Origin: Macrostomum lignano | Taxonomy: Eukaryota | Direction: 5' to 3' | Length of the DNA stretch: 64,000 nucleotides | Assembly (NCBI GenBank): GCA_002269645.1 | Contig: NIVC01001103.1 | Span: 124,001 to 188,000 of the forward strand | In this document: one piece after another, positions 234 through 64,000 of the stretch | How positions within the stretch are numbered: the stretch's first letter is position 1 | Layout: the number at the start of each line of letters is the position of its first letter | Translations under genes and position numbers: made by a program | The notes under the pieces: generated by a model | Database searches by the model: none | The model's input: only the letters and a program-made list of their open reading frames with translations | What the model was told of the DNA's origin: nothing

Positions 234-1049
234 TTGCTAGGGGAAGAATCGCGAGGAAAAACGCAGGGCTTTACACACCGCACATGGATCCCGTGTTCCC
301 GTGATCCCGCGGCGTTGGCACGCGATTTTCGATGCACCAGCCAAATTCCACTGAGAGTCTGCGCATTGAGTCTCATGGTCTGCATCGGTTTGGTTCCCGA
401 CAGGATCCAGATAGTCTCATTGTTTGACAGGGGCGCGGGACTCCGAATTCTGGATTACGCAACTGGCACGCTCTACATTATAACAATAATGAAAATAGTT
501 TACGATTGGCTGCTGGTTATAAAAACTTTGGCTCTGCTTTGGAATATTGTTGGCATATTTTTCTTCTTTATGGCCATCATCTTCTTGGTTATCGGCCTGT
601 TCTGCTGGCTCATCACGCTCATCGTGCCGTGCGAAATTGCCTTCGACCGCGAGATGTTCGCCAATCCGTCTTACGGCCTGTTGAACTTCTACCTGATGGT
701 CAGCCACGGCGGCCTGTCCCGAGAATCCGCGCAGTCTCTGGGCGTCTTCTACCTGGTGACGCACGCCCTCATCGCACTGTTCTGCTTCAATTTTCTAGTC
801 GCCTTAATGTCGGAGCGATTGTCAACCGCGTCGCGAGATCTGCCTTACATCTGCGCCTCCTACAAGCTGTACATTTACCACGTCTACATGCTGTGCATTG
901 CCTTCGTGAGCCGGCTGGTGCAGTGTAAGAGAAAAATAACTACTGCGAAAGACAACAGTCCGCTTCAGTTCTGCAGAATTTTGGAGCCACAACTCAGATT
1001 CACCGACTTAAAGGGAGCACGACAATCCACTGCCAGCTATTTAGGTTAG
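234..1049 (+). CDS. TRP-channel-like membrane protein (S5-pore-S6 region); probably a terminal exon or partial gene
   Basis: Several hydrophobic helices, a pore-helix-like segment (FANPSYGLLNFYLMVSHG) and an S6-like segment ending NFLVALMSE, resembling TRPV/TRPA N(L/M)LIA(M/L)M. Possible acceptor ttgctag at about 240. True start not established. Confidence 0.6.
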   Translation: MLGEESRGKTQGFTHRTWIPCSRDPAALARDFRCTSQIPLRVCALSLMVCIGLVPDRIQIVSLFDRGAGLRILDYATGTLYIITIMKIVYDWLLVIKTLALLWNIVGIFFFFMAIIFLVIGLFCWLITLIVPCEIAFDREMFANPSYGLLNFYLMVSHGGLSRESAQSLGVFYLVTHALIALFCFNFLVALMSERLSTASRDLPYICASYKLYIYHVYMLCIAFVSRLVQCKRKITTAKDNSPLQFCRILEPQLRFTDLKGARQSTASYLG

Positions 1050-1135: not shown

Positions 1136-1899
1136 TCGACAGTTACTTTCAACATCTTAGCTACGATACTTTATTCAGAGCTATACAAAGTTCTCTATAC
1201 CCCTATTTGAAACCGTTTTAGTCTATCAAAACGTTTCAGTTGTTCTGGAAGTTGTTTTTCTGTTTTCTGTTTATGACTGTCCTAATATCCTGTAATAATG
1301 ATTACGAGTATGCTATCCTCTGCTAGATAAGGATCGTGTTTTCGTATTCTCTTTGAAAAACAGCATTCCGCTTTGGAACATTTTGCTGAGTCATGACCAC
1401 TACAATTATTGTTTTTTTTACTTCAAGCGCGAGCTTCAATAGAGAAGTATTAAGTATAAGGAATAAAATAGCCGCCTTGAGTGCAAGAACTGCAAAAACA
1501 GCTGATAAAGTCGAAGCAAACTTAGCTGCTTTACCTTCCGCAACACTGCGGGCGGGCGAGCTTACTTGAACTCAACAACACGAGCTGCAATAATATTTAC
1601 GATGCATGGCTGGGCTTAACAAAGATTGTAAACCATGTCTTTTGAGATAATATTAGTCATAATGTAAACTCTCAGCTTTAATAAAATATTGCTTTTCGGG
1701 GCATGTTCTATTTTTATACTTGTCGTAAGCGCTTCTTTTTAAGGATGCACCTGAGGCCAGATAACTACAAGAGACGCAATAAAACAGATAAAAATCTCAA
1801 AAAATCACGCGCCTTTGCACACACTGGTCTATAAAAGTAATAAAATTTTTGAATTAGGGAAATCATGCAATTACAACGTGAGCAGTGCAAGCAGCAAAA

Positions 1900-4800
1900 A
1901 TGCACGACACAGAGCTTCATCAAGCTTGCGACAACGGCGACAGTGGGGCCGTAGAGCGACTGCTGAAGTCTGGCGCCGATCCGGACGCTCGGAACGCGTC
2001 GGGTCGGACGCCACTTTGGGTGGCGAGCCAGAAAGGTTTTGTGCCTGCGATGGAGCCGTTGTTGGATGCTGGAGCTCAGCTAGACTGCGCCCAGAGCGAC
2101 GGAGCGACTCCACTGTTCGCGGCTGCTCAGGGTGGCTGCGACCCGGCAGTGGCGAAGCTGCTCGAGGCAGGTGCAAGTTCGGACCTCCAACGCCAGGACG
2201 GCTCCACACCGCTGCTGATTGCTGCTCAGACGGGTCACGCCAGAGTCGTTCGCTGTCTTCTCGACGCTGGAGCCGACCCGAACCGACAAAGAAACGACGG
2301 CTCGTCGCCACTGCTCATGGCGGCTCAGTACGGTCAGCAGAGAGTGCTCGAGATGCTGCTGCAAGCTGGAGCTGATCTCCACCTGCCCAACATCTTCGGA
2401 TCGGCGGCCCTGTTCGCAGCCTGCTGGTGGAATCATTTCACAGCCATTCGTCGACTGCTGCAGGTCGGCGCGGACGTGAACCTGAAGACGAACTCCAAGT
2501 GGACACCGCTGCACAAGGCTGCTCAGAAAGGCTACCTAGAGTTAGTGAGCTTCCTCATCGAGTCAGGAGCTCTTGTAAATGCTCTGGACAACGTCAGATC
2601 ATCTCCACTGCACACAGCAGCTGAGAACGGACACGATGAGGTAGTGAAGTTTTTAATTGAGTCCAATGCGTCAATCAATGCACAGGACTCGAAGGGAGAC
2701 ACGCCGCTCCACAGGGCAGCCAAAAAGGGCAACACTGGTGTGATACGAGTTCTGTTAGAGGCCGGTGCAGATTCCAGCTTAGAGAACAAGTCCGAGGAAC
2801 TTCCGATCTGTCTGGCCGCGAGCCACTGCACACAAATGGAAGCAATCGAGCTGCTGCTTCACGCAAGCCAGCCTCATAGCGGTCACATCGAGGCGGCAAT
2901 TGCTGCCGCATGTTGCTACGGGCTCGGGAACAATGCTCTGCGACTACTCAAAAGTGTCAGAGTTGATGCAGAAGTGTTGCGGCGTATTGTCCCAAAGTCC
3001 TGCGCCAGTCTGGCGGTTCAGTGTCTGCGCCGCTTTGACAGAAGCACATCGGGAAATGTAGCATTCGGATCGACTACTCCATCCAATTGGTAAGTTAACA
3101 CCATATTAAAAATTTATGGTAAACCACATTGGTATTTACTACTTGCCAAATGATACTCTTCCACGTTAAACTCAGGCGCACTTCTTCCGAGAGCCAATTT
3201 AGCACAGAGCTGTTTGAAACTCTCGATGGCTCCGGCTTCAACAGAGTCGGTGCCCTCGGTCAGCAGGCTGAGGCAGAAATTTTGCAGCAAATCGTTCGTC
3301 ATCTGAAGCCAGACACGTGCATCAATGTAGTTGGCAGCTTCAGCGAAGGATGGGGCAGCTCGTTGAAGTGTCTTAATGGCCAGATCGACAAGGACTCCGA
3401 CATCGACTTCACGGAGATCCTCGCTGACAAACTGCACATCAAAGGTCGCTGCCAATGCGAGTCACCGGATCCTCAGAAAATAGTCGAATACAAGAAAGGT
3501 TACGTTCGCTACCCCGTTGCAAGTAAGTTAAACTCGGTCGCAATTGTGCTTTCTGATTTGTAAATAGCAGCTTGACTTTGGCCCTGCAAATCCGCTTGTA
3601 AAGAAAGATCCAAATAAATAACCGTTGTATCAAATACCGAAACTGCGTTTGTTGCAGCTGCGAATCCGAGCAACCCTCAGTTCGGCACGCCCCAGTCCCC
3701 AGCCATGGACTACGTTAACGCCTTGCGAACCTGCTGCTACCCGGACATTGAGGTCCTAAGACCAGGTCGACCGACTCAAATCCAACCGCATCTGCTCAAA
3801 GCACTCACAACCGAGCTCCAGACGTCCCTGTGTCACTTGGTCAGAGCGGCACCTCCTGACAAGGAAGGCGAATGGCTTAGATTGAGCACCACCTTCCTCG
3901 AGAGGCTCATGATTCGAGGCTTCAACACACTGCAAGGCCAGCTGTTCGTCATCCTCAAGTTCCTCATCAAGCGACATCTGTCCAAGTCAGTAAGCGTTCT
4001 CAAGACCTACGTGGCAAAGACGCTGATGTTCCGCATGATTGACGAGACTGCTGAAGACGAATGGCGTGCTGACAATCTGCTGCAGCTCACACGGCGAGCT
4101 CTGGAGATTCTGTGCGACGGTCTGCAGCATGGCGGAGAGCACGAGTGCCTGCCGCACTTCTTTGCACCTGACGCAGTCGTGTACCTGCGGAGTGATCACT
4201 CGGAAAAGAGCGACGTAATGAAAGCAATTAAAAGCACACTGGAAAACCTGAGACAGCCTCTTGTCCAACTCATGGGACAGCTGGTCACTACGAAAAACTC
4301 GAAATTCATGCAGTTTCACCCATTTACATTGGTGCCGGTTACATATGATCTGCACTCAGTCTGCACCGACATCAGCCTGCTGCACCTTTACCCCGTGGTG
4401 TGGACTCTGTTGCGAGATTTGGCAACCGATTCGAAACCCCCGATGCAGCTCATTAGCAGCATCCCTGATTGCGCGTTGTCAGTTCGAGAGAGCCTCAGAG
4501 CGATGGCCCAGCTGAAGATGGGTCAGCAAGAAGCTGCCTTGTACACACTGCGAGCGGCGGCTCAACACACGGTCAGCAAAGGAGTCGTTAAAAAGCAGCT
4601 CACTACTCTGTCGGATGTCACCGCGGATGTCTGGCAGCAGCTGGAGAACAGCGACTCGATCTGGCGATTCTGCTTCCGCTACGACCGACGTCCGGATCTC
4701 AAGTTCTTGCCCCGGTTCGTCAAAGACAACTTTCCCCTGGGCATGCAGATCTACGGAAACAGGTTCTACATGAACTTCAGCGCACTGCTGAAGTGCCTGT

Positions 4801-5125
4801 GTCTGGAGCTCATTCCGACCGACGTGAAGGACGAGTCCCGACGCTGGTTCGAGGAGACACTCGGAGATCAGGAGGCAGACGCGGCCGACCTCCTGCTGGC
4901 TCTACAGTACTGCACCGACGCGGAAACCCTGGCCGGCATTGTGCACCGGAACAGTGACGTCATCGCGAGTACACCATCTATGCAGTCGAAACTCAGCGAC
5001 AGCATGCTGCGACTGGTGAGTGATAGCATATGCATCCTTGATATAAGTAGCGTTTCTCATTCCATCTTCATGATTTTAAACCGAAATAGATGGAGAAAAT
5101 TGATTCATCCAACCACGGATTGTAG
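1900..5125 (+). CDS. Ankyrin-repeat + Mab-21/cGAS-like nucleotidyltransferase (cGLR-like), copy A. Exons 1900-3089, 3176-3522, 3658-5015, plus an uncertain terminal exon (e.g. 5090-5125)
   Basis: About 10 ANK repeats (TPLH/TPLL motifs). GT-AG introns 3090-3175, 3523-3657 and donor at 5016 join in frame: 2895 nt = 965 codons. NTase motif GSFSEG...DSDID, third Asp in MDYVNALRTCCYP, and Mab-21 C-lobe motifs HLV...WLRLSTTFLE, LKTYVAKT, W....L and LPHFF. Confidence 0.85.
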
Positions 5126-5880
5126 CCGAACCTGCACGAGAGCTGCATGCGACGGACTTTGCTGGGCTTGGCGCACCAACTGCGTCTGGAAGCAACCGCC
5201 GGAAAGTGTCGCCGTCGGCGGCGGCGCAGCGGCCGAATGCGGGAGCTGCCAGTGGCTGTGCGCACGTAGTGCAATCAGTGCGTTAAGCATGAACTGTTTG
5301 CTAAAGCTAAAAACTAAACTTACGACTTTACATGTACGCTCGTATTTCTGGCAATATTTGCTGTTCATCTTCATTTATTTATTACAAGCGAACAAGACGA
5401 TAGTAATTAGTTGAGAGTGCCGATGGGCATCACTGAGCAGTTATTCTGCAGAGCTAATAAATCCAGCTATTTAGACTCATCTGTGGGAGAAAAAGAGCAA
5501 ATTTTGAATCCCTTTTATACAAAGCAAGTCTTAGTCTCTTTATCCTGTCGTGAAAGTTGTTGGCCTTGAAATCTTTTTGAATTCTCACAGCATAGGCAAA
5601 CTTTTCACTTAGCATAAATTCTAGCAACGACTTGCTGGACTATCTCTGGAAATCGATCTGAATACAAATCTATAATTTTCTATGTGATTTTAATTCCCGC
5701 CTGATAAAAAATAATTTTTGCTAATACTGCGAGTTATAATGATTTCTCCTGTAAATATTTTCATAATTTAACATTTGCAAAGAAATAGAGTCGAACTAAA
5801 GTACAAAGATGACTACAGGTCAAGGAGTAACTATCGGCGGCAATCAGTTTACAGACATAACAGATTTATAGCTTCCAGCT

Positions 5881-6144
5881 CTACAACTTTGTATGGATTT
5901 TTAGAGTTCGTATATACTCAGACAGACGTAGCGTGAATTCCTTGAGCATATTCGACTGCCGCTCCGAGAGCAGAGCGATGATAAACTTGAAGCAGAACAG
6001 CACGGTGAGTGCATGGGTCAGCAGGAACAGATCGTACACCAGGTCTACTGACTTTATCAACTCTCTCAAAAGCCAATCGTTGCTGGTTAGCAGATAAAAT
6101 GTGAGCAGCCCAGACCGCAGGTTCAGGTGCAGCGCAGGCAGTAT
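5881..6144 (-). pseudogene. Degraded paralog of the TRP-like pore-domain ORF
   Basis: Open frame reads GLLTFYLLTS...FLLTHALTVLFCFKFIIALLSERQS versus GLLNFYLMVS...FYLVTHALIALFCFNFLVALMSERLS in ORF 234-1049. In-frame stop immediately upstream (6145-6147). Confidence 0.6.
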
Positions 6145-6310
6145 CTACGGCCGTATCGTAGAAAGCTCTGGTGGCGCAGACAGACCAGCATGAGGAAGCA
6201 GAGAACCAGGATGACTGCCCTCATAACTGACTAACTGTTGCAACGAAGATGATTTGCCAATTATTTAACCAAATAGGTTCCCTCACTTTGCTTAGTTGCA
6301 TACAACCCGG

Positions 6311-6560
6311 ATCCAGAGCAGCTCAGCGGTAACGCGTCACCACTCCCAGGTTCGATCCCTGCTCGGCCGCATTCATTTGAGACTTTTAACGAAAATTGGC
6401 CTGGGGATGTTGTGAGATTCACACCTATGAGGATCAACTGCCAAGGCACAGAAAGTGTACATGTCTGACGATTAGAAAGTTAGGACCGCTGTACACCCTG
6501 TGTGAGCGTGTGTGAGTGTACTACAGTATTGGCGCGTTTGTATGTGCTCAGGGGGTCGCC
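6311..6560 (+). mobile_element. tRNA-derived SINE, family B
   Basis: A-box-like gctcagcggtaa and B-box-like ggttcgatcc; body similar to the reverse complement of 45690-46015. Confidence 0.55.
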
Positions 6561-6599
6561 ATCAAAAACCCGAAAAATCACAACCTGAAAGCACTTCCC

Positions 6600-6815
6600 A
6601 TCATAAACCCGAAATATCACAAACCCGAAATATCACAAATCCGAAATATCATAAACCCGAAATATCACAAACCCGAAATATCATAAACCCGAAATATCAC
6701 AAACCCGAAATATCATAAACCCGAAATATCACAAACCCGAAATATCACAAACCCGAAATATCACAAACCCGAAATATCATAAACCCGAAATATCACAAAC
6801 CCGAAATATCATAAA
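6600..6815. repeat. 16-bp tandem repeat (aaacccgaaatatcaY)
   Basis: About 13 near-identical units. Confidence 0.9.
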
Positions 6816-7000
6816 CCATATGGATTTCTATGGACTTTCAAAGCAAGAAAATTCTATGTTTTTGATTTGCTGTTTCTCTGCTCCGTATGCATTGCTTTCT
6901 GTATTATAGCTCCTTGATGGTAAGCATTTTTTGTTAGTGCAGGCAGATACTACTTATTAAATTTCCGAATAAACAATTAGAATAAATATTATATTAGATC

Positions 7001-7539
7001 CAGGGGCGTAGGGAGGGGGATAGGGGGGATGTATCCCCCCCGAAGAGCCTGGCCAAAACTTTTTTGTTGTCCTTTGTTGCTATACATGCTACCATGTGAC
7101 TCTGTCATAGCACTTTTTCCTTGGTGTATCCCCCCCGTAGGAAATTCACCTTGGTGTATCCCCCCGTAGGAAATTCACCTTGGTGTATCCCCCCCGTAGG
7201 AAATTCACCTTGGTGTATCCCCCCGTAGGAAATTCACCTTGGTGTATCCCCCGTAGGAAATTCACCTTGGTGTATCCCCCGTAGGAAATTCACCTTGGTG
7301 TATCCCCCCGTAGGAAATTCACCTTGGTGTATCCCCCCGTAGGAAATTCACCTTGGTGTATCCCCCCGTAGGAAATTCACCTTGGTGTATCCTCCCGTAG
7401 GAAATTCACCTTGGTGTATCCCCCCGTAGGAAATTCACCTTGGTGTATCCCCCCCGTAGGAAATTCACCTTGGTGTATCCCCCCGTAGGAAATTCACCTT
7501 GGTGTATCCCCCCGTAGGAAATTCATGGCTACGCCCCTG
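7001..7539. mobile_element. hAT-type MITE with internal ~29-bp tandem array
   Basis: Perfect 11-bp TIRs CAGGGGCGTAG (7001-7011) / CTACGCCCCTG (7529-7539). Perfect 8-bp TSD attagatc at 6993-7000 and 7540-7547. About 14 internal units cttggtgtatc(c)ngtaggaaattcac. Confidence 0.85.
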
Positions 7540-7642
7540 ATTAGATCCATAGAATTGTATGGATGAACATAAATTTCAACACAATTTTCTTAAGTCATTG
7601 TTAAGTCATTGTTAGCCTATTTTAGAGACACTGTTTCCAAGG

Positions 7643-9619
7643 TTACCATTGCATCTTCCAGTCAGGTGTGGTTTTATAGTCCGGGCGTGGAGGCCGTGTC
7701 TCTCGCTCAGGCTCAGGTGTGGTCTCATAGTCCGGGCGTGGAGGCCGTGTCTCTCGATCAGGCTCAGGTGTGGTCTCATAGTCCGGGCGTGGAGGCCGTG
7801 TTTCTTGCTCAGGCTCAGGTGTGGTCTCATATTCCGGGCGTGGAGGCCGTGTTTCTTGCTCAGGCTCAGGTGTGGTCTCATAGTCCGGGCGTGGAGGCCG
7901 TGTTTCTTGCTCAGGCTCAGGTGTGGTCTCATAGTCCGGGCGTGGAGGCCGTGTTTCTTGCTCAGGCTCAGGTGTGGTCTCATAGTCCGGGCGTGGAGGC
8001 CGTGTTTCTTGCTCAGGCTCAGGTGTGGTCTCATATTCCGGGCGTGGAGGCCGTGTTTCTTGCTCAGGCTCAGGTGTGGTCTCATAGTCCGGGCGTGGAG
8101 GCCGTGTTTCTTGCTCAGGCTCAGGTGTGGTCTCATATTCCGGGCGTGGAAGCCGTGTTTCTTGCTCAGGCTCAGGTGTGGTCTCATATTCCGGGCGTGG
8201 AGGCCGTGTTTCTTGCTCAGGCTCAGGTGTGGTCTCATAGTCCGGGCGTGGAGGCCGTGTTTCTTGCTCAGGCTCAGGTGTGGTCTCATAGTCCGGGCGT
8301 GGAGGCCGTGTTTCTTGCTCAGGCTCAGGTGTGGTCTCATATTCCGGGCGTGGAGGCCGTGTTTCTTGCTCAGGCTCAGGTGAGGCTCCACCAAAATCAT
8401 AAAGGTGGGGAGGCAATGGTGGCAAATTTTTTGTCACGGATTGTACTTCTGGAAAATAACTGGCAACGATTTTTGTGTAACGAAACAGCTGGCTCATGTG
8501 ATACCAAATCCGTCTGAGCACTTCTATTTGCCAATAATCGAGCTGAAGGACACGTTTCGTGTTAGGCTTTTCTTCTTTTGGCTCACTGGTGCCGTATTGC
8601 CTGGTCCTGCCGTTTGTAGTGTAATCCTCCTGCGGTGTAGGGAACCATGGAGAGCGCGTAGTCTTGCCGTATTGCCTGGTCCTGTAGTTTTCAGTGTACT
8701 CCTCCCGCGGTGTAGGGAACCATGGAGAGCGCGTAGTCTTGCCGTATTGCCTGGTCCTGTAGTTTTCAGTGTACTCCTCCCGCGGTGTAGGGAACCATGG
8801 AGAGCGCGTAGTCTTGCCGTATTGCCTGGTCCTGTAGTTTTCAGTGTACTCCTCCCGCGGTGTAGGGAACCATGGAGAGCGCGTAGTCTTGCCGTATTGC
8901 CTGGTCCTGTAGTTTTCAGTGTACTCCTCCCGCGGTGTAGGGAACCATGGAGAGCGCGTAGTCTTGCCGTATTGCCTGGTCCTGTAGTTTTCAGTGTACT
9001 CCTCCTGCGGTGTAGGGAACCATGGAGAGCGCGTAGTCTTGCCGTATTGCCTGGTCCTGCCGTTTGCAGTGTCATCCTCCCGCGGTGTAGGGAACCATGG
9101 AGAGCGCGTAGTCTTGCCGTATTGCCTGGTCCTGTAGTTTGCAGTGTAATCCTCCCGCGGTGTAGGGAACCATGGAGAGCGCGTAGTCTTGCCGTATTGC
9201 CTGGTCCTGCCGTTTGTAGTGTCATCCTCCCGCGTTGTAGGGAACCATGGAGAGCGCGTAGTCTTGCCGTATTGCCTGGTCCTGCCGTTTGTAGTGTCAT
9301 CCTCCCGCGTTGTAGGGAACCATGGAGAGCGCGTAGTCTTGCCGTATTGCCTGGTCCTGTAGTTTGCAGTGTAATCCTCCCGCGGTGTAGGGAACCATGG
9401 AGAGCGCGTAGTCTTGCCGTATTGCCTGGTCCTGTAGTTTTCAGTGTACTCCTCCCGCGGTGTAGGGAACCATGGAGAGCGCGTAGCAGCGTCGTAATGG
9501 CTTGTCCTGTAGTTTCTATTGTAATCCTTCCATGGCCGTTGGAATCTAAACGTGGGAAGGGCAACGACCGCGCTCAATCCGAGAGCAAGGAGCAAAAGCA
9601 CGATCTTTAAGTCAGCCAT
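7643..9619 (-). CDS. Secreted Thr/Pro/Arg/Glu/Tyr-rich protein with two tandem-repeat domains
   Basis: ATG at 9619 with signal peptide MADLKIVLLLLALGLSAVVALP. 12 x 25-aa repeats (TTRSPWFPTPREEYTENYRTRQYGK), a unique linker, then 14 x 17-aa repeats (PEPEQETRPPRPEYETT). One stop-free frame spans both arrays and the linker. Confidence 0.8.
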   Translation of the reverse strand: MADLKIVLLLLALGLSAVVALPTFRFQRPWKDYNRNYRTSHYDAATRSPWFPTPREEYTENYRTRQYGKTTRSPWFPTPREDYTANYRTRQYGKTTRSPWFPTTREDDTTNGRTRQYGKTTRSPWFPTTREDDTTNGRTRQYGKTTRSPWFPTPREDYTANYRTRQYGKTTRSPWFPTPREDDTANGRTRQYGKTTRSPWFPTPQEEYTENYRTRQYGKTTRSPWFPTPREEYTENYRTRQYGKTTRSPWFPTPREEYTENYRTRQYGKTTRSPWFPTPREEYTENYRTRQYGKTTRSPWFPTPREEYTENYRTRQYGKTTRSPWFPTPQEDYTTNGRTRQYGTSEPKEEKPNTKRVLQLDYWQIEVLRRIWYHMSQLFRYTKIVASYFPEVQSVTKNLPPLPPHLYDFGGASPEPEQETRPPRPEYETTPEPEQETRPPRPDYETTPEPEQETRPPRPDYETTPEPEQETRPPRPEYETTPEPEQETRLPRPEYETTPEPEQETRPPRPDYETTPEPEQETRPPRPEYETTPEPEQETRPPRPDYETTPEPEQETRPPRPDYETTPEPEQETRPPRPDYETTPEPEQETRPPRPEYETTPEPEQETRPPRPDYETTPEPDRETRPPRPDYETTPEPERETRPPRPDYKTTPDWKMQW

Positions 9620-10710
9620 GCTTGTCAATTCGCTGATACGAATTTCTCAGTAAGGACTTCAAAGTGGACCTGTATTGTGTTATATAGTCTGCAAATGCGC
9701 ATAAACGGACGACATTTTCACTCCATTTGAGAAAAATACTTACCTCGAAAAAATTCAAAGGCTGCTGTGCAGACAATCATAAACAGATAATTGCGTCTCA
9801 GGTATAAAAAGATATTTCGATTTTTGCGATTTTGCAGACAGAGAGAAAATATTCTTTGAAATGCGAAATTAGACGCCGCCTTTTCGCTAAATTTGCCGAA
9901 GCGAAAAAATAAAAGAATAGCCAGGAAATTATTCGATTTATTTTCAATTTTAGCTTCAAATTCTTATGCTGTCTTGGATTAATATCTTCACTAAGCCAGC
10001 TTACATTTCAGTTACTAATTAAGCTACTAAACTTGACACAACGACCTGTATATTGATGAATCAAACAATGAGTTAACTTAATTAAACCAAAATAGCTAAA
10101 TCCAAGATGACTTGTTGTTGACGTGACATTTACAAAGTATATGTATCGAACCACCATCAAATAGTTGCCAAGTCGGATTTTAAACGTCGCAAAATGACCT
10201 TTAATGTTCGCTCAACGCAGCGGTGCTTCAGATCGGCCTGCAAAATTACGAGTGCAGACATCAATTCGTTTTCCTTCCAAAATTAAAAATGACGAATAGG
10301 ACTCAAAAGAACCACAAAACGAAAAAGCTAAGGAACTCGCATCGTTTCTCGTAATGTTTTGAAAGCTAATCTGTTTTAACAAAATAAACGGTGAAAGTCT
10401 TTGATTCAAGGCCTGCTACTAAATGGTTGAGCATACTAATACATGTGTCATGTCTTCGTATGCTCCGTTTATTATGTTTATCGTCCTACTGAATCATAAT
10501 CGATAACTACAATCGTACATTAAGATGTTAGAGACTGGTGTTTAAGATATTAAAATCTAATTAGAATCGCGACATGCATAATTTTGTCAGGAAATACGCA
10601 ATTCACCGGCCTCAAATCAAACCCTGTCACTGAAATTCACTGTCGGGAAATTCTAGTTATGAAAATGATCCTTAACAAAATGAAGGCACACAAATTATTG
10701 CTTTACTTAC

Positions 10711-13700
10711 GTTTCTTGCAAAACCGGCTTCCAAATTTGATTGAAGACTTGGTAAAATGTCGATAACGTCACTGTTCCGGTGCACAATGCCGGCCAGGGT
10801 GTCCGCGTCGGTGCAGTACTGCAGAGCCAGTAGGAGGTCGGCCGCGTCTGCCTCCTGATCTCCGAGTGTCTCCTCGAACCAGCGTCGGGACTCGTCCTTC
10901 ACGTCGGTCGGAATGAGCTCCAGACACAGGCACTTCAGCAGTGCGCTGAAGTTCATGTAGAACCTGCTTCCGTAGATGAGTTCGTCTTTGACGAACCGGG
11001 GCAAGAACTTGAGACCCGGACGTCGGTCGTAGCGGAAGCAGAATCGCCAGATCGAGTCGCTGTTCTCCAGCTGCTGCCAGACATCCGCGGTGACATCCGA
11101 CAGAGTAGTGAGCTGCTTCTTGACGACTCCCTTGCTGACCGTGTGTTGAGCCGCCGCTCGCAGTGTGTACAAGGCAGCTTCTTGCTGACCCATCTTCAGA
11201 TGGGCCATCGCTCTGAGGCTCTCTCGAACTGACAACGCGCAATCAGGGATGCTGCTAATGAGCTGCATGTCAACATGTGGTTCTTCTGCTAGTTGCAGAA
11301 TTGTCATCCAGACAAGTAGGTAGATGTCCAAGATTTGGGGACGCGTCGCATCGATTGAACATATACCCATTCTGATTGAATGTTCATCGTATAAAACAGG
11401 AATTAGTGTCATTGGATGAAATTCAAATATTTCCTGACTTTCTTGTTGGCACAGTTGCTCTATAAATTGAAGCAGAAGCTGTCTCAGGTTTTCCAGTGTG
11501 CTTTTAATTGCTTTCATTACTTCGCTCTTTTCCGAGTGACCACTCCGCAGGTACACGGCTGCGTCAGGTGCAAAGAAGTGCGGCAGGCACTCGTGCTCTC
11601 CGCCATGCTGCAGACCGTCGCACAGAATCTCCAGAGCTCGCCGTGTGAGCTGCAGCAGATTGTCAGCACGCCATTCGTCTTCAGCAGTCTCGTCAATCAT
11701 GCGGAACATCAGCGTCTTTGCCACGTAGGTCTTGAGACCGCTTACTGACTTGGACAGATGTCGTTTGATGAGGAACTTGAGGATGACGAACAGCTGGCCT
11801 TGCAGTGTGTTGAAGCCTCGAATCATGAGCCTCTCGAGGAAGGTGGTGCTCAATCTGAGCCATTCGCCTTCCTTGTCAGGAGGTGCCGCTCTGACCAAGT
11901 GACACAGGGACGTCTGGAGCTCGGTTGTGAGTGCTTTGAGCAGATGCGGTTGGATTTGAGTCGGTCGACCTGGTCTTAGGACCTCAATGTCCGGGTAGCA
12001 GCAGGTTCTCAAAGCCCAAACGCAGTCCATGGCTGGGGACTGCATGCAGTGTAGCTGCTAGAGGATGACTTGGATTTGCAGCTAAAAGCATAAAGGTGTA
12101 TGAAATAGGCTAAAAGTGCGAAAATGACGTTGGATAAAAAACCTTAATATACGAGCTCGTACATACTTCCAACTGGATACTGAACATATCCTTTCTCGTA
12201 CGCTGCCATTCTGTTTAGGTCCGGCGCCACGCACTTGCAGTATTGTTGTAGGTGCAATTCAACCACTAAAATTACCGTGAAATCTATGTCGGAGTCGCTG
12301 TCAATACGACCATCCAGAGCTTTAAGAGAGCTGCCCCAGCCTTCACTGAAGCTCCCTACCGCATTGACACTGCCCATCCCACTTTTCCTCGCTATTTGCT
12401 GCAAAATGTCTGCCGCAGCCTGCTGCACAGCGGCACCTTCCTGGGTGAACCCAGAGTCTCTGAGGCAGCAGAATAACATCTGTGACAGGTCCTCTTCGTG
12501 ACTGAGGGTGTCGTGTCTGTAAGGCAGTGAAAACGTTTTCAGTCAGGACTGTTAAGTTTCTAAACACAACTCTCATACTACTTTTACTAAGCAGTATTTT
12601 ACCTTTTTAGTTTCTTTTTCTGCAAAACTGTTTGTTGCTTTACAAGATCTATGCAGTCCTCAAGTAGTGCGACACACTGGCTCGGCATGTCTAGCAGATT
12701 GCTCTTGTTCAGGCTGCTATGATTTCCGCGCATAATAATAAGCGCCGTCTCCCAATGACCCAATTGGCAGGCCTTAACCAGACAAGCTTCTGGGCTTTGA
12801 ATGGAAGAGCCAAGGTCTTGCACTTTTAGCAGCGAAGTTGCCGTTTCCCAGTGCGGATCTGCAGCCAAAGCCAGGGGCGTGTCTCCAGCATTGTTCACAA
12901 GAGAAGCTGAGGCTCCCGCATCGAGCAGCGTCTTGATAACATCTGTATGACCTTTCATAGCCGCTCTATGGAGAGGAGAATTTCCGGCCGCATCCTGGGC
13001 GTTCACTGAAGCATTAGACTGAATAAGAAGCCTCACCACTTCTGCTCGTCCATTCTCTGCTGCAGAGTGCAGCGGGGACGATTTAACATTGTCAAGAGCG
13101 TCGATTTCGGCCCCATTTTCGATTAGAAATATTGAAAGCTCAATGTGACCTCTCTGAGCGGCTTTGTGCAACAGAGTCCACTTTGTTTTAGTCTTCTGAT
13201 TAACATCCGCTCCAGCGTCGAGCAGCCACCGCATGACTGTCACATCGCCCCAACCGACTGAGGCGAACGCTGGTCCAACTAGAAATTGATTTGTCAGCGT
13301 AACATCTGCGCCAGCGCCCAGCAGTAGCTTCAATATTTGGTTTTGACCGCACTGGGCCGCGATGATTAGCGGAGTTGAGCCGTCGATTCTGCGTAAATTG
13401 ACATCAGCCCCGGCGTCAAGGAGTTGGCGGACAATACGGATATTTCCAGCCCGTGTAGCGATCAGCAGCGGCGTTGATCCGTCCAAACGCTGGGCATTCG
13501 GACTCGCGCAGGCCAACAGCAGCGTCGCAACGGCGGCGTCACAGCTGCCTTGGGCAGCCTCTAACAGCGGAGTTGCACCGTCGATCTGCGAGCAGTCAAC
13601 CTGGGCTCCAGCGTTCAGTAGCGGCGCCATCGCTGCAACCACATCTTTTTGGCTTACCACGCAAAGCGGCGTCCGACCCGACGAGTCGCGAGTGTCCGGA

Positions 13701-13780
13701 TTGGCGCCAGATTTCAGTAGCAACTTCACAGCCTCAATGTCTTCGGTGAGACAAGCGCGATGCAACTCAGACCCTGGCAT
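10711..13780 (-). CDS. Ankyrin-repeat + Mab-21/cGAS-like nucleotidyltransferase, copy B. Exons 13780-12603, 12516-12167, 12081-10711; apparent 4-bp frameshift at the start of exon 3
   Basis: Same domain order, intron positions and phases as copy A (intron 1 is 86 nt in both). GSFSEG...DSDID motif intact. TGCA duplication at about 12041-12048 breaks the frame relative to copy A. Terminal exon not identified. Confidence 0.8.
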
Positions 13781-14371: not shown

Positions 14372-15655
14372 ACAATGTAATATTCCTGCACGAAAACGAG
14401 TGCGTCAATGGCAAAAGCACGAGTGCGCGAAGCGCACGAGTGCATTTTGCCATAGACGCACGAGTTTGCGTGTAGGAAAATCATTGTCTTTTGACCATAG
14501 ACAAAGTCATTCCTGCACGGTTTTCGAGAAACGTTAAGAAGAGATGAAAATTGAGTGGAGAGTTTATAGAAAAGTGTATAAAGCTTATTGACTATGGCGT
14601 CTGTAATCGACTCGGCTCTGAATCCTCCATTAATTGATTTTCGCTACGCTACGGTGTCTGGATTAAGTGGCGACGAAATGTTTATTGAAAGTGTGTCCAG
14701 CAACTTTGAGAGGACGGGCGACGATTTGACTGCACTGATAGCGGATTGCACGTTCAGCGAGGAATTAGAGAAACTTTTCAGCTCGGATCCGGAAACCTTG
14801 TGTAACCTTGACGAATTGGAAAGTCTGGCCGCTCAACTGGAACGCGACAACGAATGTCATTCGACTGTCTCTAAGGAGAAAGCTGTGATCAACCGCTTGA
14901 CGGCCTGGTTGGCGGAGAATAATTTAAAAGTGGATTACGCGACTGCTTCGGTGGAAGAAATTGCCAAATGGGTCCGCTACTTCTATGCGACTCTGCGTAA
15001 GTCAGACGGCAGCTTCTATTCGCCGAATACAATCGTAGGATATCGAGCCGCACTGATCAGGTACTTTATGAGAGGCAAGAAGAGGGACTCGATCATGGCA
15101 GGGATGAGTGATCAGCTGACAGTCGCTCTAGCTGGAACTATGCCGGCACCAAGTTCTACATTGAGCGAAGCTCCTGCAAGGGCTGTTACAACTACCGACC
15201 CGTGCGCCCTGAACGACGCTCCTACAAGGGCTGTTGCGACTACCGACCCGTGCGGATCAGCGTCAATGTCAACTGTCAAGAAGTCACTGGTTGTTGAAGA
15301 ATCGACCACCACACTTGTAGCAGCCCCCACTAAGCGGATGAAGATTTTGGCAAACGGCAAAACGAATGTTGTGCAGTTTATTTTCGAGTAAATGCCGAGA
15401 GGGGTGTGAGTAGGTCTATAGACTCATTAACTGTTTCCCTAGTTCCACTTATTATCCTTTTTGTTCTTCCATATTGTTATTGATTACATATTCAGTTGCT
15501 TCTAAAAATAAATTGTTAAATCGTGCAGGAATGAAGTCATTCCTGCACGATAAGCTAACGTATGTCAAGTGATTTCTACCATAGACACAGACATTCCTGC
15601 ACGATAATAAATCGAAAAAATCATTCCTGCACGCTGTGGTCAAACGACAATGTAA
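14372..15655 (+). mobile_element. Non-autonomous Crypton-like (DUF3504 / tyrosine-recombinase class) element 1; ORF 14594-15391 internally deleted
   Basis: ORF contains YFYATLRKSDGSFYSPNTIVGYRAALIRYF, the typical N-terminal motif of DUF3504/ZMYM/Crypton proteins, but no catalytic core. Bounded by 9-bp direct repeats ACAATGTAA, with hairpins near both ends. Confidence 0.65.
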
Positions 15656-16638
15656 CGATATATACCGATTTTTTTCGGCAGCAATTGCGTAAGCTGAAGC
15701 CGCGTAGGAATGCGCTTTGAAAGGGTTGTAGAGATAATCAATCGTCTATGGCAAATTTAGTTGCTCTCTAAATGAAAGGGTTGTAGAGATAATCAATCGT
15801 CTATGGCAAATTTAGTTGCTCTCTAAATGAAAGGGTTGTAGAGATAATTAATCGTTTATGGCAAATTTAAAGGACAGTGAAGACAGCTAGCCTGGCTGCC
15901 ATGAGTTAATTCTCAAGTTGATTTTGAGCTTGAATTAATTCTCCTATTCGGAGTGCAAATAGGAAAACTAGCTATGATTCGCTACGCAAACATTCCTGGC
16001 GGAGAAATATGTGGACTCTCCACGGACGAGTTGGCTTTTGTCACCCGAGAGTCGAGCACGCGCTACGTTCTGGAGATGGACAACCTGGATGCGTCGTCCA
16101 GTTCCAACGGGCTGCCTGAGCTAGGTAGCGAAGATCTGGAAATGTTGGACCGACTTGAGAGTGACTCAGTGCCGAAATCGACCGAGACGCAACGGAAGCT
16201 TCACGTGGCAAGGTTCCGACAGTTCCTCAACGAGAAGGGGCTTTGCCAGGAGTTTGAGCGTGTTCCGGATCGATTTTTGAACGATTATCTGAGGCTTTTC
16301 TGAGGTTTGTTCTTAAGAACTTTTTGTGACTATGAAACACTTTCGCCGTGTTGCTATTGTTGTTCCTTGTTTTGATAGCCAAATACATTCGTCTGAAATC
16401 CGGCAACAATCGAAAAAAGCCGACAAACAATTAAATTGTTACCGCAAGTATGAATGCCGGAAACCATAGACAAAAGGGAACAATGCAAAGAATCAGCGGT
16501 CGCAGCACGTGACAACCGATTTGTCTATGGCAATCGTTGTCACGCACTGGGACCGCTGATTATTTATCCATTGTTTAGTAATGTATTGTTTTGCATAAAC
16601 TGTGCGAACAACGATAGTCAAATTGCTAAACAATGTTA
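15647..16638 (+). mobile_element. Crypton-like element 2 (N-terminal fragment ORF 15953/15974-16303)
   Basis: VPKSTETQRKLHVARFRQFLNEKG...EFE...LNDYLRLF resembles the Crypton/DUF3504 N-terminus. Shares accatagaca and gtctatggcaaa motifs with element 1. Long hairpin at about 16478-16575; 55-bp tandem repeat at 15718-15870. Confidence 0.5.
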
Positions 16639-20151: not shown

Positions 20152-23052
20152 CAATAATGCAATGTAGAAAAATGTGTTTAGAAACAATTAGTACTATTTT
20201 ATTAGCACATCAAACTGACCTGCTCAAGCATGGAGTCGCCAACACCGTCGCGGTACAGGATGATGCGGGCGGGCAACTCGCCGTTTTTCTCCCTGAACTT
20301 CTGCAGGGCCATAGTGAAGCCAGCATCCAGCCTGTTGTGAAGCTCAGCTTTGCCTCCCTTCACGATTGGCGAGTACGAGTAGTACTGGGTGAAGGTTTCA
20401 TTTAGTGAGAACACCACACCCTGCACGGAGCGACTTTGCCGCTTGTCGTGGTAGCTGTCCATCCCTATGATCATTGTGCGCTTTATCGGGATGCTGAGAG
20501 CCCAAGCAACACCGCCCAGCTTGCAGGAGATCTGTATAGCCACCTTCGTAGCAACGGACATTACTTTGGCCGGGTTGCGGATAGTCTTGGTAAGTACGCA
20601 CTGGCTCGGCACCGGCTTATCCACGTAGCACAGGCGTTTGATGATGTTATATCGATGGGCATTGTTGTTAGGCAGCAGACAGAACACAAGGTCCAGCTCC
20701 TGATTGATGTTATCTTGGATAGTCTTTAGCCAGAACTGGTCTCGGTCCTGCATCACGGGCAGCACGTAGGGCTCGCCAAATGACATTCCGAGAGACTGAG
20801 AAACCCGATGGAGCTTCTGGCAGAAGTCGGCGGCCGCCTGCTCGTCTCGCTGAAAATAGACGAATATCCAATTCTTGCAGTCGATTGGCTGGAACATGCC
20901 GTTGCCCTTAAGGCCATTGTCCCAGTCAGCGCGCTCAGGGTCCACCCTGATTGGCCGCGACATCTGCACAGTCTCCGGCTGCAGCTGGCGGGCGGTGGCC
21001 TCCACAGCGTTAGGCGATACTTCCAGACCGAACTCTCCCAGCACCCGACGGCTCTCGGGATTGCCAGCCATTGTGCGGGCAAAGGTGAGCATCTTGTCGC
21101 ACCGAGCTGACGGATTGACCCTAGTATGGGTGGCCAGATCCCTCATCAGGTTGCGGTCAGCTCGCATGTCATCAGTGAGGCCGGTCATGTAACAGACCTC
21201 CGGCGGCAGTAGCACGTTATCCGCCTGCTCCCGGCGGCCTCCCTTAGTTGGCGGCAGATCTCGCTTGCGCGGTTTGGACACCAGAAGCGGCTGCTTATCA
21301 TCTGCCAGATCGATGTCGTAAGTCTGCTTAAAGTACTGCCCGAAAGTAATCTGTTCCTCCTGCCGGGTGGTCTTGTTAAACCAGCGGAAATGCTCGTTTA
21401 CGCCCTTGTCCCACTCGATGCTGTCAATCCGATAGGTCTTATTATTGTGCCGAGTCAGCACTATTTGGCCGACCAACGCGCTTTCAGCTGCGGCGTGAAA
21501 CTGATTGCTAGCGACTCGATTATACATGTCATACATAAAGTCTAACACGGTGTTGGTGTGAATAAACTTGTTCGACGGATCCAGGTAAAGCATCAGCGGC
21601 CCGTCAGTGGGTTTCACTGCCATCTCGAATCCCGGCCAAACCTGGGGAACAGATTGGCGATGCTTATTATAGTTTTTGTTGTATATTTGTTGTAAGGGGG
21701 CTGCAGCCTAGTGGTTAGAGCGTTGGACTCACGACTTGCAGGTCGGGGGTTCGAATCTCTGACTCACTCGGAACAATTTGTGTCCTTGAGCAAGACAATT
21801 AACTCTTCAGTTTAACCAGCTGTGAAATGGGCACAGCATTAGCTGGGATATTTGAGGCTGTGTGGCGACCCTCCCCCCCCCTCAGTCCTTGGACTGAACA
21901 GCCGTACGCAGCCTTCAGATGCGCCGCGCAATAGCTGCGGCTGAGCTGTCGGTTGCACAACTGTATATTAGAGCAGCTGCAATCAATTATTATTGGGTAT
22001 TTCTACCAAAACGAGACACTGTCTCGTTTTCTCGTTTTCCAAATTGTATGTTGGACACTCAAGGGTTTCGCAGTATACTTTTAACTCGTGCGATCCTAGT
22101 TTGGCTTGCACAATAATAAACTTAAGTCAGAGTATTAAGATGATTTAAATACAAAAATGAATTTTTATGAAAAATACGTGTTTTCTTTCGTTTGAAACCA
22201 AATTTGGTTTTAAAATCAATTTAAACTAGAGAAACTTTGATAAAATTGTCATCTTACCTCCATACCGTAGTTAGGAAGCCTGGTGGCCTGGTCCGGATAA
22301 TAAAAGTTTCGACCAACCATCTGCATATTGAGGTACCGCTGAGCCTTGCCAAGCACAACATTCATCAGGTGCAGCCATTGCGGCGTGTTCCTATTAACTT
22401 CGCCCACCTGCCGGATGGCCACTTCGCCAGTCCAAGACTTGATGCTGGCCTCGAACTTCACTCCCTCAGGCGGATTCAGTGGCTGCCTCGTGTACAGAAT
22501 GCCGCCATCGTAGACGAACGGCTTTGGCACCTGACTGGCGTCAGTCAGCAGCTTCTCGCGAAGCGGTTTGGCACCCAGCATCGGGCGAAAATCCACAGCC
22601 ATCTGGTAGGTGCGCCAGTTGTCTTTAACGTTGAGAGCAACGTAATTGGTCACAACCTGAACAGGGGCGCCACTGGTGCCTCTCTTGTTGCTGACCGGAA
22701 CGCCCTCAGGTCGAACATTCGCTAGCTGGTAGCGCAGTAGCTTCCGCTGCAGGCCGCCCCGTTCGCCGCCAACCTGCAGGCCGGCCATGCGCTCTGCCAG
22801 CTGTTCTGAGTCTCCGCCAGTGGCACCTGCACCCTGGCGATACCCGAAGCCAGAAGCTCCGGGCGGCCCCGCTAAACCAGGAGGCGGAGCTGGAGACGAA
22901 GCAGCAGCAGCAGGCGATGTTGAAGCTGCGGCTGCTGAGCCGGAGTCAAAAGATGCAGCAGAGGCAGCACTGGCGGAAGCCTCAGCTGGCCGTGGTCCGG
23001 CGCGACCGCGAGAACGACCTCGGCCTTTGGTAGCATGCTGCTGCTGAGACAT
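19587..23052 (-). CDS. piwi: Piwi-clade Argonaute, 898 aa. Exons 23052-22258, 21641-20220, 20066-19587
   Basis: N-terminal GRGRSRGR motifs, VWPGF, PAZ domain (TYRIDSIEW), MID/PIWI motifs PSQC, [38 protein letters not shown], C-terminal LFFL. Phase-0 GT-AG introns join in frame (2697 nt). Confidence 0.95.
20103..20147. repeat. (CT)n(CA)n microsatellite in piwi intron 2
   Basis: Direct observation. Confidence 0.9.
21696..21995 (+). mobile_element. tRNA-derived CORE-like SINE, family A (in piwi intron 1)
   Basis: A box gcctagtggtta, B box ggttcgaatc, CORE-like gtgtccttgagcaagacaattaact, (TTA)n tail; similar copies at 47956 and 59525. Confidence 0.8.

Positions 23053-54160: not shown

Positions 54161-64000
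<9,840 letters not shown>

What the first reader, a model, noticed from the sequence alone, without database searches (positions are those of the whole stretch)
1900..13780. Convergent pair of ankyrin-fused cGAS-like receptors (ANK-cGLR) with an intact catalytic triad
Seen: the ORF track shows ankyrin and Mab-21 pieces separately, but canonical introns join them in frame into one ~970-aa protein (ANK x ~10, NTase lobe, Mab-21 C-lobe, helical tail). It occurs twice, tail to tail, with identical intron positions and phases. Copy A keeps GS-x-EG, D-x-D (3399-3407) and the third Asp (3708-3710). Known: these are the metal-binding residues of cGAS/cGLR/CD-NTase enzymes that make cyclic dinucleotide second messengers, and ANK-fused cGLRs occur in some invertebrates. 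Inference: a duplicated nucleotide-messenger immune sensor whose ankyrin array sets ligand specificity. If the host is a flatworm, a group in which cGAS/STING was earlier reported lost (as I recall), the downstream receptor may be unknown.
Basis: partly seen in the sequence, partly recalled or inferred. Interest (0 to 1): 0.9.

Follow-up and report, generated by a model that had tools for sequence, protein, structure and literature searches.

The report
Flatworm ankyrin-fused cGAS-like receptor gene pair
The window holds two convergent genes of the flatworm Macrostomum lignano that fuse ankyrin repeats to a cGAS-like enzyme; one is intact, the other is frameshifted, and the family was already catalogued as cGAS-like receptors in 2023.

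Summary
It has 9-10 ankyrin repeats, a linker, an NTase lobe, a Mab-21 helical lobe and a ~235 aa C-terminal domain. They are invariant in 12 paralogs. An AlphaFold model (pLDDT 83) matches cGAS best in the PDB. Copy B (- strand, 13780-10672) has intact ANK and NTase exons. At the homologous intron-2 acceptor, however, it is out of frame by +1 and stops after 541 codons. The only database model for B is truncated at that point. Exon 3 of the two copies carries two ~99% identical tracts inside otherwise ~67% identical genes, which indicates gene conversion. The host is Macrostomum lignano. The gene belongs to a large M. lignano-restricted ANK-cGLR expansion. Li et al. 2023 curated this family as cGLRs and cloned five paralogs for their biochemical screen. 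No flatworm enzyme is among the actives that paper names. This is a new member of a known kind. Product, ligand and receptor remain unknown, and I did not test whether M. lignano has STING.

The parts
1900..3089 (+). Copy A exon 1. It encodes 9-10 ankyrin repeats (aa 1-~330) and a ~67 aa basic linker. It ends in a phase-2 intron.
   Evidence: ORF and splice reading. Pfam Ank_2 E 3.8e-76 with 9 Ank stretches. The junction is reproduced in P0001.
3090..3175 (+). Copy A intron 1 (GTAAGT...CAG, 86 nt, phase 2).
   Evidence: Paralog P0013 has a phase-2 intron at about the same place.
3176..3522 (+). Copy A exon 2, the NTase N-lobe. It holds the spine helix, G450-S451 (3333-3338) and D472-I-D474 (3399-3407).
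   Evidence: G, S, D and D are invariant in 12 family members. In the AlphaFold model, GS follows strand 58-62 and D85/D87 (core numbering) open strand 85-98.
3523..3657 (+). Copy A intron 2 (GTAAGT...TTGCAG, 135 nt, phase 1). It splits the Thr codon of YPVA-T-ANP.
   Evidence: Paralog P0013 of the NCBI annotation has an intron at the same position and phase.
3658..5015 (+). Copy A exon 3. It encodes the third catalytic Asp D530 (3708-3710), the Mab-21 helical C-lobe and a ~235 aa C-terminal domain of unknown fold.
   Evidence: PF20266, E 2.6e-5. Family profile against PDB: cGAS, E 5.6e-8. hhalign to bivalve cGLRs: 98.8%, starting at the third Asp. The tail model has pLDDT 80.5 but no PDB match.
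5016..5269 (+). Copy A 3' end. The intron 3 donor GTGAGT is at 5016. There are two possible last exons: 5090-5125 (MEKIDSSNHGL*) or 5126-5269 (PNLHESCMRR...VRT*, as in P0001).
   Evidence: The choice between the two acceptors is not resolved.
12603..13780 (-). Copy B exon 1 (ANK array and linker). It is open and 62% identical in protein to A over the ANK part.
   Evidence: dN/dS 0.16 against A.
12167..12516 (-). Copy B exon 2 (NTase N-lobe). It is open and keeps GSFSEGWG and SDIDF.
   Evidence: dN/dS 0.21 against A. The UniProt model P0100 is 100% identical here and runs on into the intron to a stop.
12033..12081 (-). Copy B frameshift zone. The linker ANPSHPLAATLHA is in the exon-2 frame and SPAMD is in the +1 frame. 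With the homologous acceptor (exon 3 from 12081) translation stops after 541 codons. An alternative acceptor (CCCCAG|CC, exon from 12032) would restore the frame but deletes the conserved linker.
   Evidence: The start of the ~99% identical tract shared with copy A lies here.
10672..12045 (-). Copy B exon 3 ORF (third Asp, Mab-21 C-lobe, tail). It is open on its own but not joined in frame to exon 2.
   Evidence: 82% protein identity to A.
3695..4965 (.). Gene-conversion mosaic, in copy A coordinates; the partner is 12042-10761. Tracts 3695-4234 and 4451-4965 are ~99% identical between the copies. The 4235-4450 stretch is ~55% identical. The ANK and NTase exons are 67% identical.
   Evidence: blastn and a 60-nt sliding identity. 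P0001 carries copy B residues at several exon-3 positions.

Best explanation
Copy A is an intact gene for an ankyrin-fused cGAS-like receptor (cGLR) of Macrostomum lignano. It is one member of a large lineage-specific expansion with the layout ANK repeats, linker, NTase/Mab-21 catalytic cage and a family-specific C-terminal domain.

Inferred mechanism, by analogy with cGAS and other cGLRs: the enzyme rests inactive. A ligand, sensed by the cage surface, the ankyrin array or both, reorders the GS activation loop. The three Asp residues then bind two metal ions, and the enzyme joins two NTPs into a nucleotide second messenger that a receptor reads.

Copy B is an old paralog (dS about 2, dN/dS about 0.2). 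It has recently exchanged most of exon 3 with copy A by gene conversion. As assembled it is disabled by a +1 frameshift at the edge of the converted tract.

Shown here: gene structure, motif, fold homology, family membership, the conversion mosaic and the frameshift. Inferred only: enzymatic activity, product, ligand, the role of the ANK array and tail, and the receptor.
For: - Gene model: the GT-AG introns join in frame, the same junctions occur in P0001, and paralog P0013 in NCBI GCA_002269645.1 has introns at the same positions and phases.
- Motif: VVGS, 20 residues, DIDF, 55 residues from D474 to D530 (AMDY). This fits the G[S/G] and [DE]h[DE] X50-90 [DE] rule of Li et al.. G63, S64, D85, D87 and D143 (core numbering) are invariant in 12 paralogs that are 29-43% identical.
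- Fold: the AlphaFold model has pLDDT 83.3 and pTM 0.83. All of the top 41 Foldseek PDB hits are cGAS (E 1e-7, target TM 0.5-0.57). Sp-cGLR1 and MAB21L1 follow.
- Sequence: PF20266 is above its cut-off. The family profile hits cGAS at E 5.6e-8, 8gjy (Sp-cGLR1) at 4.6e-6 and MAB21L1 at 3e-3. hhalign to bivalve cGLRs gives 98.8% and aligns the third Asp to their invariant Asp.
- Literature: five M. lignano family members were curated and cloned as cGLRs. PAA45980.1 is collinear with the A-type protein, E 3e-93.
- Copy B: frameshift, truncated database model P0100, purifying selection in exons 1-2, and the conversion mosaic.
Against: - The NTase N-lobe has no sequence-level match. PF03281 is not hit and the N-lobe profile finds nothing in the PDB. 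N-lobe homology therefore rests on the motif and the predicted fold.
- The residue before GS is Val, not the Q/T of the strict motif, and the GS-to-DxD spacing (20) is at the upper limit of that motif.
- Foldseek TM-scores are moderate (about 0.55) with rmsd of 5-8 A.
- The active enzymes Li et al. name come from insects, anemones, molluscs, hydras and corals. The five M. lignano constructs were therefore apparently silent with poly I:C and dsDNA.
- The NCBI annotation has no protein for copy A, and I saw no direct transcript evidence.
- One paralog (P0020) has SNVN in place of SDID, so the family includes catalytically dead members.
- B's frameshift could be an assembly indel.
Confidence: 0.75

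Rival explanations
1. Both copies are functional ANK-cGLRs. On this reading B's +1 frameshift is either an indel error of a long-read assembly, or B uses the downstream acceptor CCCCAG|CC (exon 3 from 12032), which restores the frame.
For: B's exons 1-2 (509 codons) have no stop, and dN/dS is about 0.2. Exon 3 is open over 457 codons. The alternative acceptor has a pyrimidine-rich tract and gives a 962 aa product.
Against: The alternative acceptor deletes the conserved ANPxxP...PA linker. It also shortens the DxD-to-Asp spacing to 38, below the X50-90 of the motif. Paralogs place the acceptor at the homologous site. The only database model of B stops in intron 2. The extra base is not inside a long homopolymer.
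Confidence: 0.3
2. Copy A is a non-enzymatic Mab-21-type scaffold or adaptor. The ankyrin array and tail would mediate protein interactions, and the NTase cage would only bind a nucleotide, as proposed for MAB21L1.
For: MAB21L1 is among the structural and sequence hits. Family members were apparently inactive in the published screen. One paralog has lost the Asp residues.
Against: The GS and all three Asp residues are invariant across paralogs only 29-43% identical. That pattern argues for selection on catalysis. cGAS scores far better than MAB21L1 (5.6e-8 against 3e-3). Most cGLRs are silent in vitro without their ligand.
Confidence: 0.15
3. The protein is an active nucleotidyltransferase of the cGAS/OAS superfamily but does not make a cyclic dinucleotide read by STING. 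It could instead make linear 2'-5' oligonucleotides, or act through its own C-terminal domain.
For: The C-terminal ~235 aa domain is conserved, confidently modelled and has no PDB counterpart. Full-length matches come only from M. lignano. The pI of copy A's catalytic domain is 6.8, below the >8.5 of nucleic-acid-sensing cGLRs. cGAS and STING are reported absent from other flatworms.
Against: No direct evidence exists. The closest structures and profiles are cGAS and cGLRs. STING presence in M. lignano was not examined.
Confidence: 0.2

Closest known systems
Macrostomum lignano cGLRs in Li et al. 2023 (PMC9980059), Table S3 rows 89-93, e.g. PAA45980.1
   Same: Same species and same architecture (ANK, linker, NTase, Mab-21, tail). 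They share the GS(F/Y)(S/A)EGWG...SD(I/V)D(V/F)...P(A/S)xD motifs. PAA45980.1 is collinear with the A-type protein over 922 aa, E 3e-93.
   Different: Only 26-36% identical. Copy A has no NCBI protein entry, so it was probably not in their nr-based list. It sits in a convergent pair with a frameshifted, gene-converted paralog.
Vertebrate cGAS (e.g. PDB 4k97)
   Same: Best structural and profile match. It shares the bilobed NTase/Mab-21 cage, the GS loop, the [DE]h[DE]...[DE] triad and the WRLSFS-like and SYHxKT motifs.
   Different: About 14% identity. Copy A has no H(X5)CC(X6)C zinc thumb. The family instead conserves H-x4-C-x-C and CC-YP. There is a 10-residue insertion between GS and DxD. 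Copy A adds an N-terminal ANK array and a 235 aa tail, and its catalytic-domain pI is near neutral.
ANK- or death-domain-fused cGLRs of the coral Stylophora pistillata, and the bivalve cGLR radiations
   Same: A cGLR core fused to repeat modules and large lineage-specific gene expansions. Bivalve cGLRs share the GSxSEGF...SDxD pattern and align at 98.8% probability.
   Different: The profile matches them only over positions ~130-340. The C-terminal domain is not found in them.
MAB21L1/2
   Same: Same fold, and hit by both the profile and the model.
   Different: Li et al. treat Mab21L1/2/3 as lacking a predicted functional active site in the tree of Figure 1A. Copy A has the full set of catalytic residues, and its scores to MAB21L1 are much weaker than to cGAS.

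Membership tests
cGLR (criteria of Li et al. 2023) | G[S/G] activation loop plus a [DE]h[DE] X50-90 [DE] catalytic triad | tested here: met
   Copy A has G450-S451, 20 residues, D472-I-D474, 55 residues, D530. These residues are invariant in 12 paralogs. The residue before GS is V, not Q/T. Copy B does not meet the feature in one reading frame.
cGLR (criteria of Li et al. 2023) | Sequence homology across both the NTase core and the C-terminal helix bundle | tested here: inconclusive
   The C-lobe passes: PF20266 at 24.7 against 24.1 bits, cGAS at E 5.6e-8, hhalign 98.8% from the third Asp onward. The N-lobe does not: no PF03281 hit and no PDB sequence hit.
cGLR (criteria of Li et al. 2023) | Predicted structural homology to cGAS / CD-NTase | tested here: met
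   The model has pLDDT 83.3 and pTM 0.83. cGAS fills the top of the Foldseek list (E 1e-7, probability 1.00, target TM 0.5-0.57, ~360 columns). The model was built on allele P0001, which differs from the window protein at 10 positions in this region.
cGLR | Ligand-stimulated synthesis of a nucleotide second messenger | not testable with these tools
   This needs recombinant enzyme assays. The published screen of five paralogs names no flatworm enzyme among its actives.
cGLR-STING pathway | A STING (or other) receptor for the product in the same genome | not tested
   No tool here searches the M. lignano proteome by family. M. lignano is absent from Table S5 of Li et al.. STING is reported absent in Schistosoma and Schmidtea.
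Ankyrin-repeat proteins | Tandem 33-residue ANK repeats | tested here: met
   Ank_2 E 3.8e-76 and 9 PF00023 stretches in aa 1-~300, plus a degenerate capping repeat.
Vertebrate-type cGAS (dsDNA sensor) | Zinc-thumb H(X5)CC(X6)C and a strongly basic ligand surface (pI above 8.5) | tested here: not met
   No such motif is present. The catalytic-domain pI is 6.8 in the window copy, against the threshold quoted.

The most novel reading that the evidence does not exclude
Macrostomum lignano may have kept and greatly expanded a cGLR clade while other flatworms lost cGAS and STING. I count at least ~40 near-full-length lineages below 50% identity. Every member would carry a C-terminal domain with no known structural relative and, usually, an ankyrin array. 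If M. lignano has no STING, these enzymes would signal through a new receptor, or through their own C-terminal domain, and would sense something other than dsDNA or dsRNA.
Probability: 0.2. Interest if true: 0.75.

Novelty: new member of a known kind. Interest (0 to 1): 0.35.

Why it matters
The locus is not a new kind of system. It gives a clean, intact example of the flatworm ANK-cGLR architecture.

Three features were not described in what I could read:
- A conserved C-terminal domain with no structural match in the PDB.
- The size of the M. lignano expansion.
- Ongoing gene conversion between inverted paralogs, one of which is broken at the edge of the converted tract.

M. lignano is a laboratory model in which RNAi and transgenesis are established (my own knowledge, not checked here). 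It would suit two open questions: what non-nucleic-acid ligands cGLRs sense, and what reads their product in a phylum thought to lack STING.

Tried and rejected
- I first handed my spliced copy A protein to the representative search and to structure prediction. I used the near-identical allele P0001 instead.
- A profile of the N-lobe alone against PDB sequences found nothing useful.
- Foldseek of the C-terminal domain found no match (best E 1.4).
- Looking up the contig that encodes P0001, to see copy B in another assembly, found nothing on record.
- For B's intron 2, I considered a phase-0 donor (GAGCTC|GTATAT) paired with the CTCTAG| acceptor. I set it aside as weak and unsupported by paralog structure.
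- I considered spending the last large protein search on a STING query. I rejected it because a negative result would be uninformative: a distant flatworm homolog would probably not rank among thousands of closer STINGs.
- Pfam on neighbouring ORFs (234-1049, 7643-9628, 14588-15391, 15953-16303) gave no significant hit.
- Literature searches for flatworm or Macrostomum cGLR or STING work beyond Li et al. 2023 found nothing specific.
Full report
**What is in the sequence**

The region is eukaryotic DNA with short GT-AG introns. On the + strand, three long ORF pieces (1885-3093, 3129-3563, 3705-5414) join in frame. The exons are 1900-3089, 3176-3522 and 3658-5015, separated by GTAAGT...CAG and GTAAGT...TTGCAG introns.

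After a GTGAGT donor at 5016 there are two possible last exons. One is 5090-5125, giving 976 aa. The other is 5126-5269, giving 1012 aa.

The UniProt Macrostomum lignano model P0001 (1012 aa) has exactly these junctions (SNW|RTSS, YPVA|TANP, LRL|P.LHES). It is identical to the window protein over residues 1-625 and differs at 11 later positions. All 20 homologs found by the word-indexed search are M. lignano proteins.

**Domain content of copy A**

Pfam finds a strong ankyrin array (Ank_2 E 3.8e-76, nine PF00023 stretches). It finds Mab-21_C (PF20266) just above its gathering score, 24.7 against 24.1 bits. The Mab-21 NTase model PF03281 is not hit.

- G450-S451 at 3333-3338
- D472-I-D474 at 3399-3407
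- D530 at 3708-3710

There are 20 residues between S451 and D472, and 55 between D474 and D530. This fits the rule Li et al. used to define cGLRs: a G[S/G] loop and [DE]h[DE] X50-90 [DE]. The residue before GS is Val rather than Gln or Thr. In an alignment of 12 family members that are 29-43% identical to copy A, the G, S and all three Asp residues are invariant. One distant paralog (P0020) has SNVN instead of SDID, so catalytically dead members exist.

**Fold and remote homology**

I therefore modelled the core of allele P0001, which differs from the window protein at 10 positions in this region.

The AlphaFold model is confident (pLDDT 83.3, pTM 0.83). It shows the expected order of elements:
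- a long helix
- a strand ending in GS
- a strand starting at the D-x-D
- a strand carrying the third Asp
- a helical lobe

All of the top 41 Foldseek hits in the PDB are cGAS structures (best 4k97_A, E 1e-7, probability 1.00, target-normalised TM 0.5-0.57 over ~360 columns). The coral enzyme Sp-cGLR1 (8gjy) and MAB21L1 follow.

A family profile hits cGAS sequences at E 5.6e-8, 8gjy at 4.6e-6 and MAB21L1 at 3e-3, all over the helical lobe. Profile-profile comparison with seven bivalve cGLRs taken from Li et al.'s Table S3 gives 98.8% probability. That alignment starts exactly at the third Asp, which pairs with their invariant Asp.

The N-lobe on its own has no sequence-level match in the PDB. 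Its assignment rests on the motif and the predicted fold.

The last ~235 residues are conserved in the family and confidently modelled (pLDDT 80.5, pTM 0.77). They have no structural match in the PDB (best E 1.4, probability below 0.12).

**Copy B**

On the - strand, exon 1 (13780-12603) and exon 2 (12516-12167) are open. They keep GSFSEGWG and SDIDF and have the same intron phases as copy A.

At the acceptor homologous to A's (TTTTAG|CTG, exon 3 from 12081), the linker ANPSHPLAATLHA reads in the exon-2 frame. The following SPAMDCVW... (ORF 12045-10672) is in the +1 frame. Canonical splicing therefore ends at a stop after 541 codons, before the third Asp.

A downstream acceptor (CCCCAG|CC, exon from 12032) would restore the frame. 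It would also delete the family-conserved linker and shorten the Asp spacing to 38.

Paralog P0013, from the NCBI annotation of assembly GCA_002269645.1, has its two introns at the same places and phases as copy A. Its second intron splits the codon before SNP. The homologous acceptor is therefore the expected one in B.

The only database protein that matches B (P0100, 100% identical) runs through the exon-2 donor into the intron and stops.

B is not an old pseudogene. Against A, dN/dS is 0.16 for the ANK array and 0.21 for the NTase exon, with dS about 2. B was either disabled recently or the extra base is an assembly error.

**Gene conversion**

At the DNA level the ANK and NTase exons of A and B are 67% identical. 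Exon 3 is a mosaic:
- 3695-4234: about 99% identical
- 4235-4450: about 55% identical
- 4451-4965: about 99% identical

The upstream edge of the first tract lies in the same few codons as B's frameshift. Allele P0001 carries B-type residues at several exon-3 positions. Sequence exchange between the inverted paralogs explains this pattern. A conversion junction may have created the frameshift, but that is inference.

**Family and literature**

A full HMMER scan of 1.84 billion representatives with the family profile found 1418 proteins at E<=1e-3 and 88 at E<=1e-30. About 40 of the latter span most of the 600-position profile.

Of the 30 representatives I looked up, all those scoring E<=1e-20 that carry an organism name are M. 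lignano proteins. Two (P0023 and P0092) carry no name. Weaker matches cover only profile positions ~130-340 and come from a bivalve, an annelid and a sea anemone.

Li et al. 2023 (PMC9980059) state that nematodes and 'most' platyhelminthes have no cGLRs beyond Mab21-like proteins. They also report ANK- and TPR-fused cGLRs. Their Table S3 lists five M. lignano proteins (PAA86972.1, PAA45980.1, PAA57558.1, PAA93208.1, PAA68676.1) cloned for the 140-enzyme screen, all with this family's motifs. PAA45980.1 lies in a cluster that matches my profile at E 1.4e-123. It is collinear with the A-type protein over ANK, NTase, Mab-21 and tail (26% identity, E 3e-93).

The active enzymes that paper names come from insects, anemones, molluscs, hydras and corals. 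The flatworm constructs were therefore apparently silent with poly I:C and dsDNA. The authors attribute such silence to unknown ligands.

Wu et al. 2014 reported loss of both cGAS and STING in flatworms, based on Schistosoma. A 2026 study found neither in Schmidtea. I found nothing on STING in M. lignano, and the species is absent from Li et al.'s Table S5.

**How it most likely works**

By homology, copy A is a pattern-recognition-type nucleotidyltransferase. It would be kept off until a ligand reorders the GS loop. It would then use D472, D474 and D530 and two metal ions to make a nucleotide second messenger.

The window copy's catalytic domain has a calculated pI of 6.8, and its paralogs range from 7.0 to 10.1. 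The published rule is that dsDNA- and dsRNA-sensing cGLRs have pI above 8.5. The cGAS zinc thumb is also absent. Both points, and the silence of paralogs in the screen, lean towards a non-nucleic-acid or protein-mediated trigger. The ankyrin array and the C-terminal domain are candidate sensing modules. All of this is inference; no activity, product, ligand or receptor has been shown.

**Verdict**

The family is already catalogued, so this is a new member of a known kind. The open points of interest are the unmatched C-terminal domain, the scale of the flatworm expansion, the gene-conversion mosaic with a broken partner, and whether M. lignano has a STING at all.

Noticed in passing
window 20202-23052, - strand: An Argonaute/Piwi-family gene lies about 6.5 kb beyond copy B's start. 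ORF 20202-21623 has PAZ (E 9.8e-33) and Piwi (E 6.8e-34). ORF 22249-23052 has a weak ArgoN match.
   Followed up: partly
window 7643-9628, - strand (between the two cGLR genes): A 661 aa ORF with a signal-peptide-like start (MTSMADLKIVLLLLALGLSAVVALP) and two blocks of tandem repeats (...TTRSPWFPTPREEYTENYRTRQYGK... and ...ETTPEPEQETRPPRPDY...). It has no Pfam hit. It is probably a secreted repeat protein.
   Followed up: partly
window 7609-8517, + strand; protein P0003: The UniProt model P0003 fuses an A-type cGLR to the opposite-strand reading of the repeat array (WSHSPGVEAVFLAQAQV...). This looks like an annotation artefact.
   Followed up: no
window 234-1049 (+) and 5881-6069 (-): Two ORFs share a hydrophobic motif (THALIALFCFNFLVALMSERL and THALTVLFCFKFIIALLSERQ). 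The second hits DUF4389 below its cut-off (22 against 25 bits). They may be membrane-protein exon fragments on either side of copy A.
   Followed up: no
copy A aa 484-491 and 538-539 (family alignment A3): The family conserves H-x4-C-x-C between the D-x-D and the third Asp, and a CC-YP just after the third Asp; H97, C104 and C151 are invariant. This may be a zinc site at a different place from the cGAS zinc thumb.
   Followed up: partly
window 5126-5269 (+): The alternative last exon of copy A encodes an arginine-rich tail (GKCRRRRRRSGRMRELPVAVRT) that looks like a nuclear localisation signal. It is used in model P0001.
   Followed up: no
window 61369-62528: Overlapping ORFs in a repeat-rich stretch give below-threshold, repeat-like Pfam matches (DUF2345, Cupin_2) with no individually significant stretch. 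These are probably low-complexity artefacts.
   Followed up: no
protein P0021 (M. lignano, 1346 aa): One family member carries two complete cGLR cores in tandem, separated by a short ANK segment. This recalls the multi-cGLR fusions noted by Li et al. It could also be a fused gene model.
   Followed up: no
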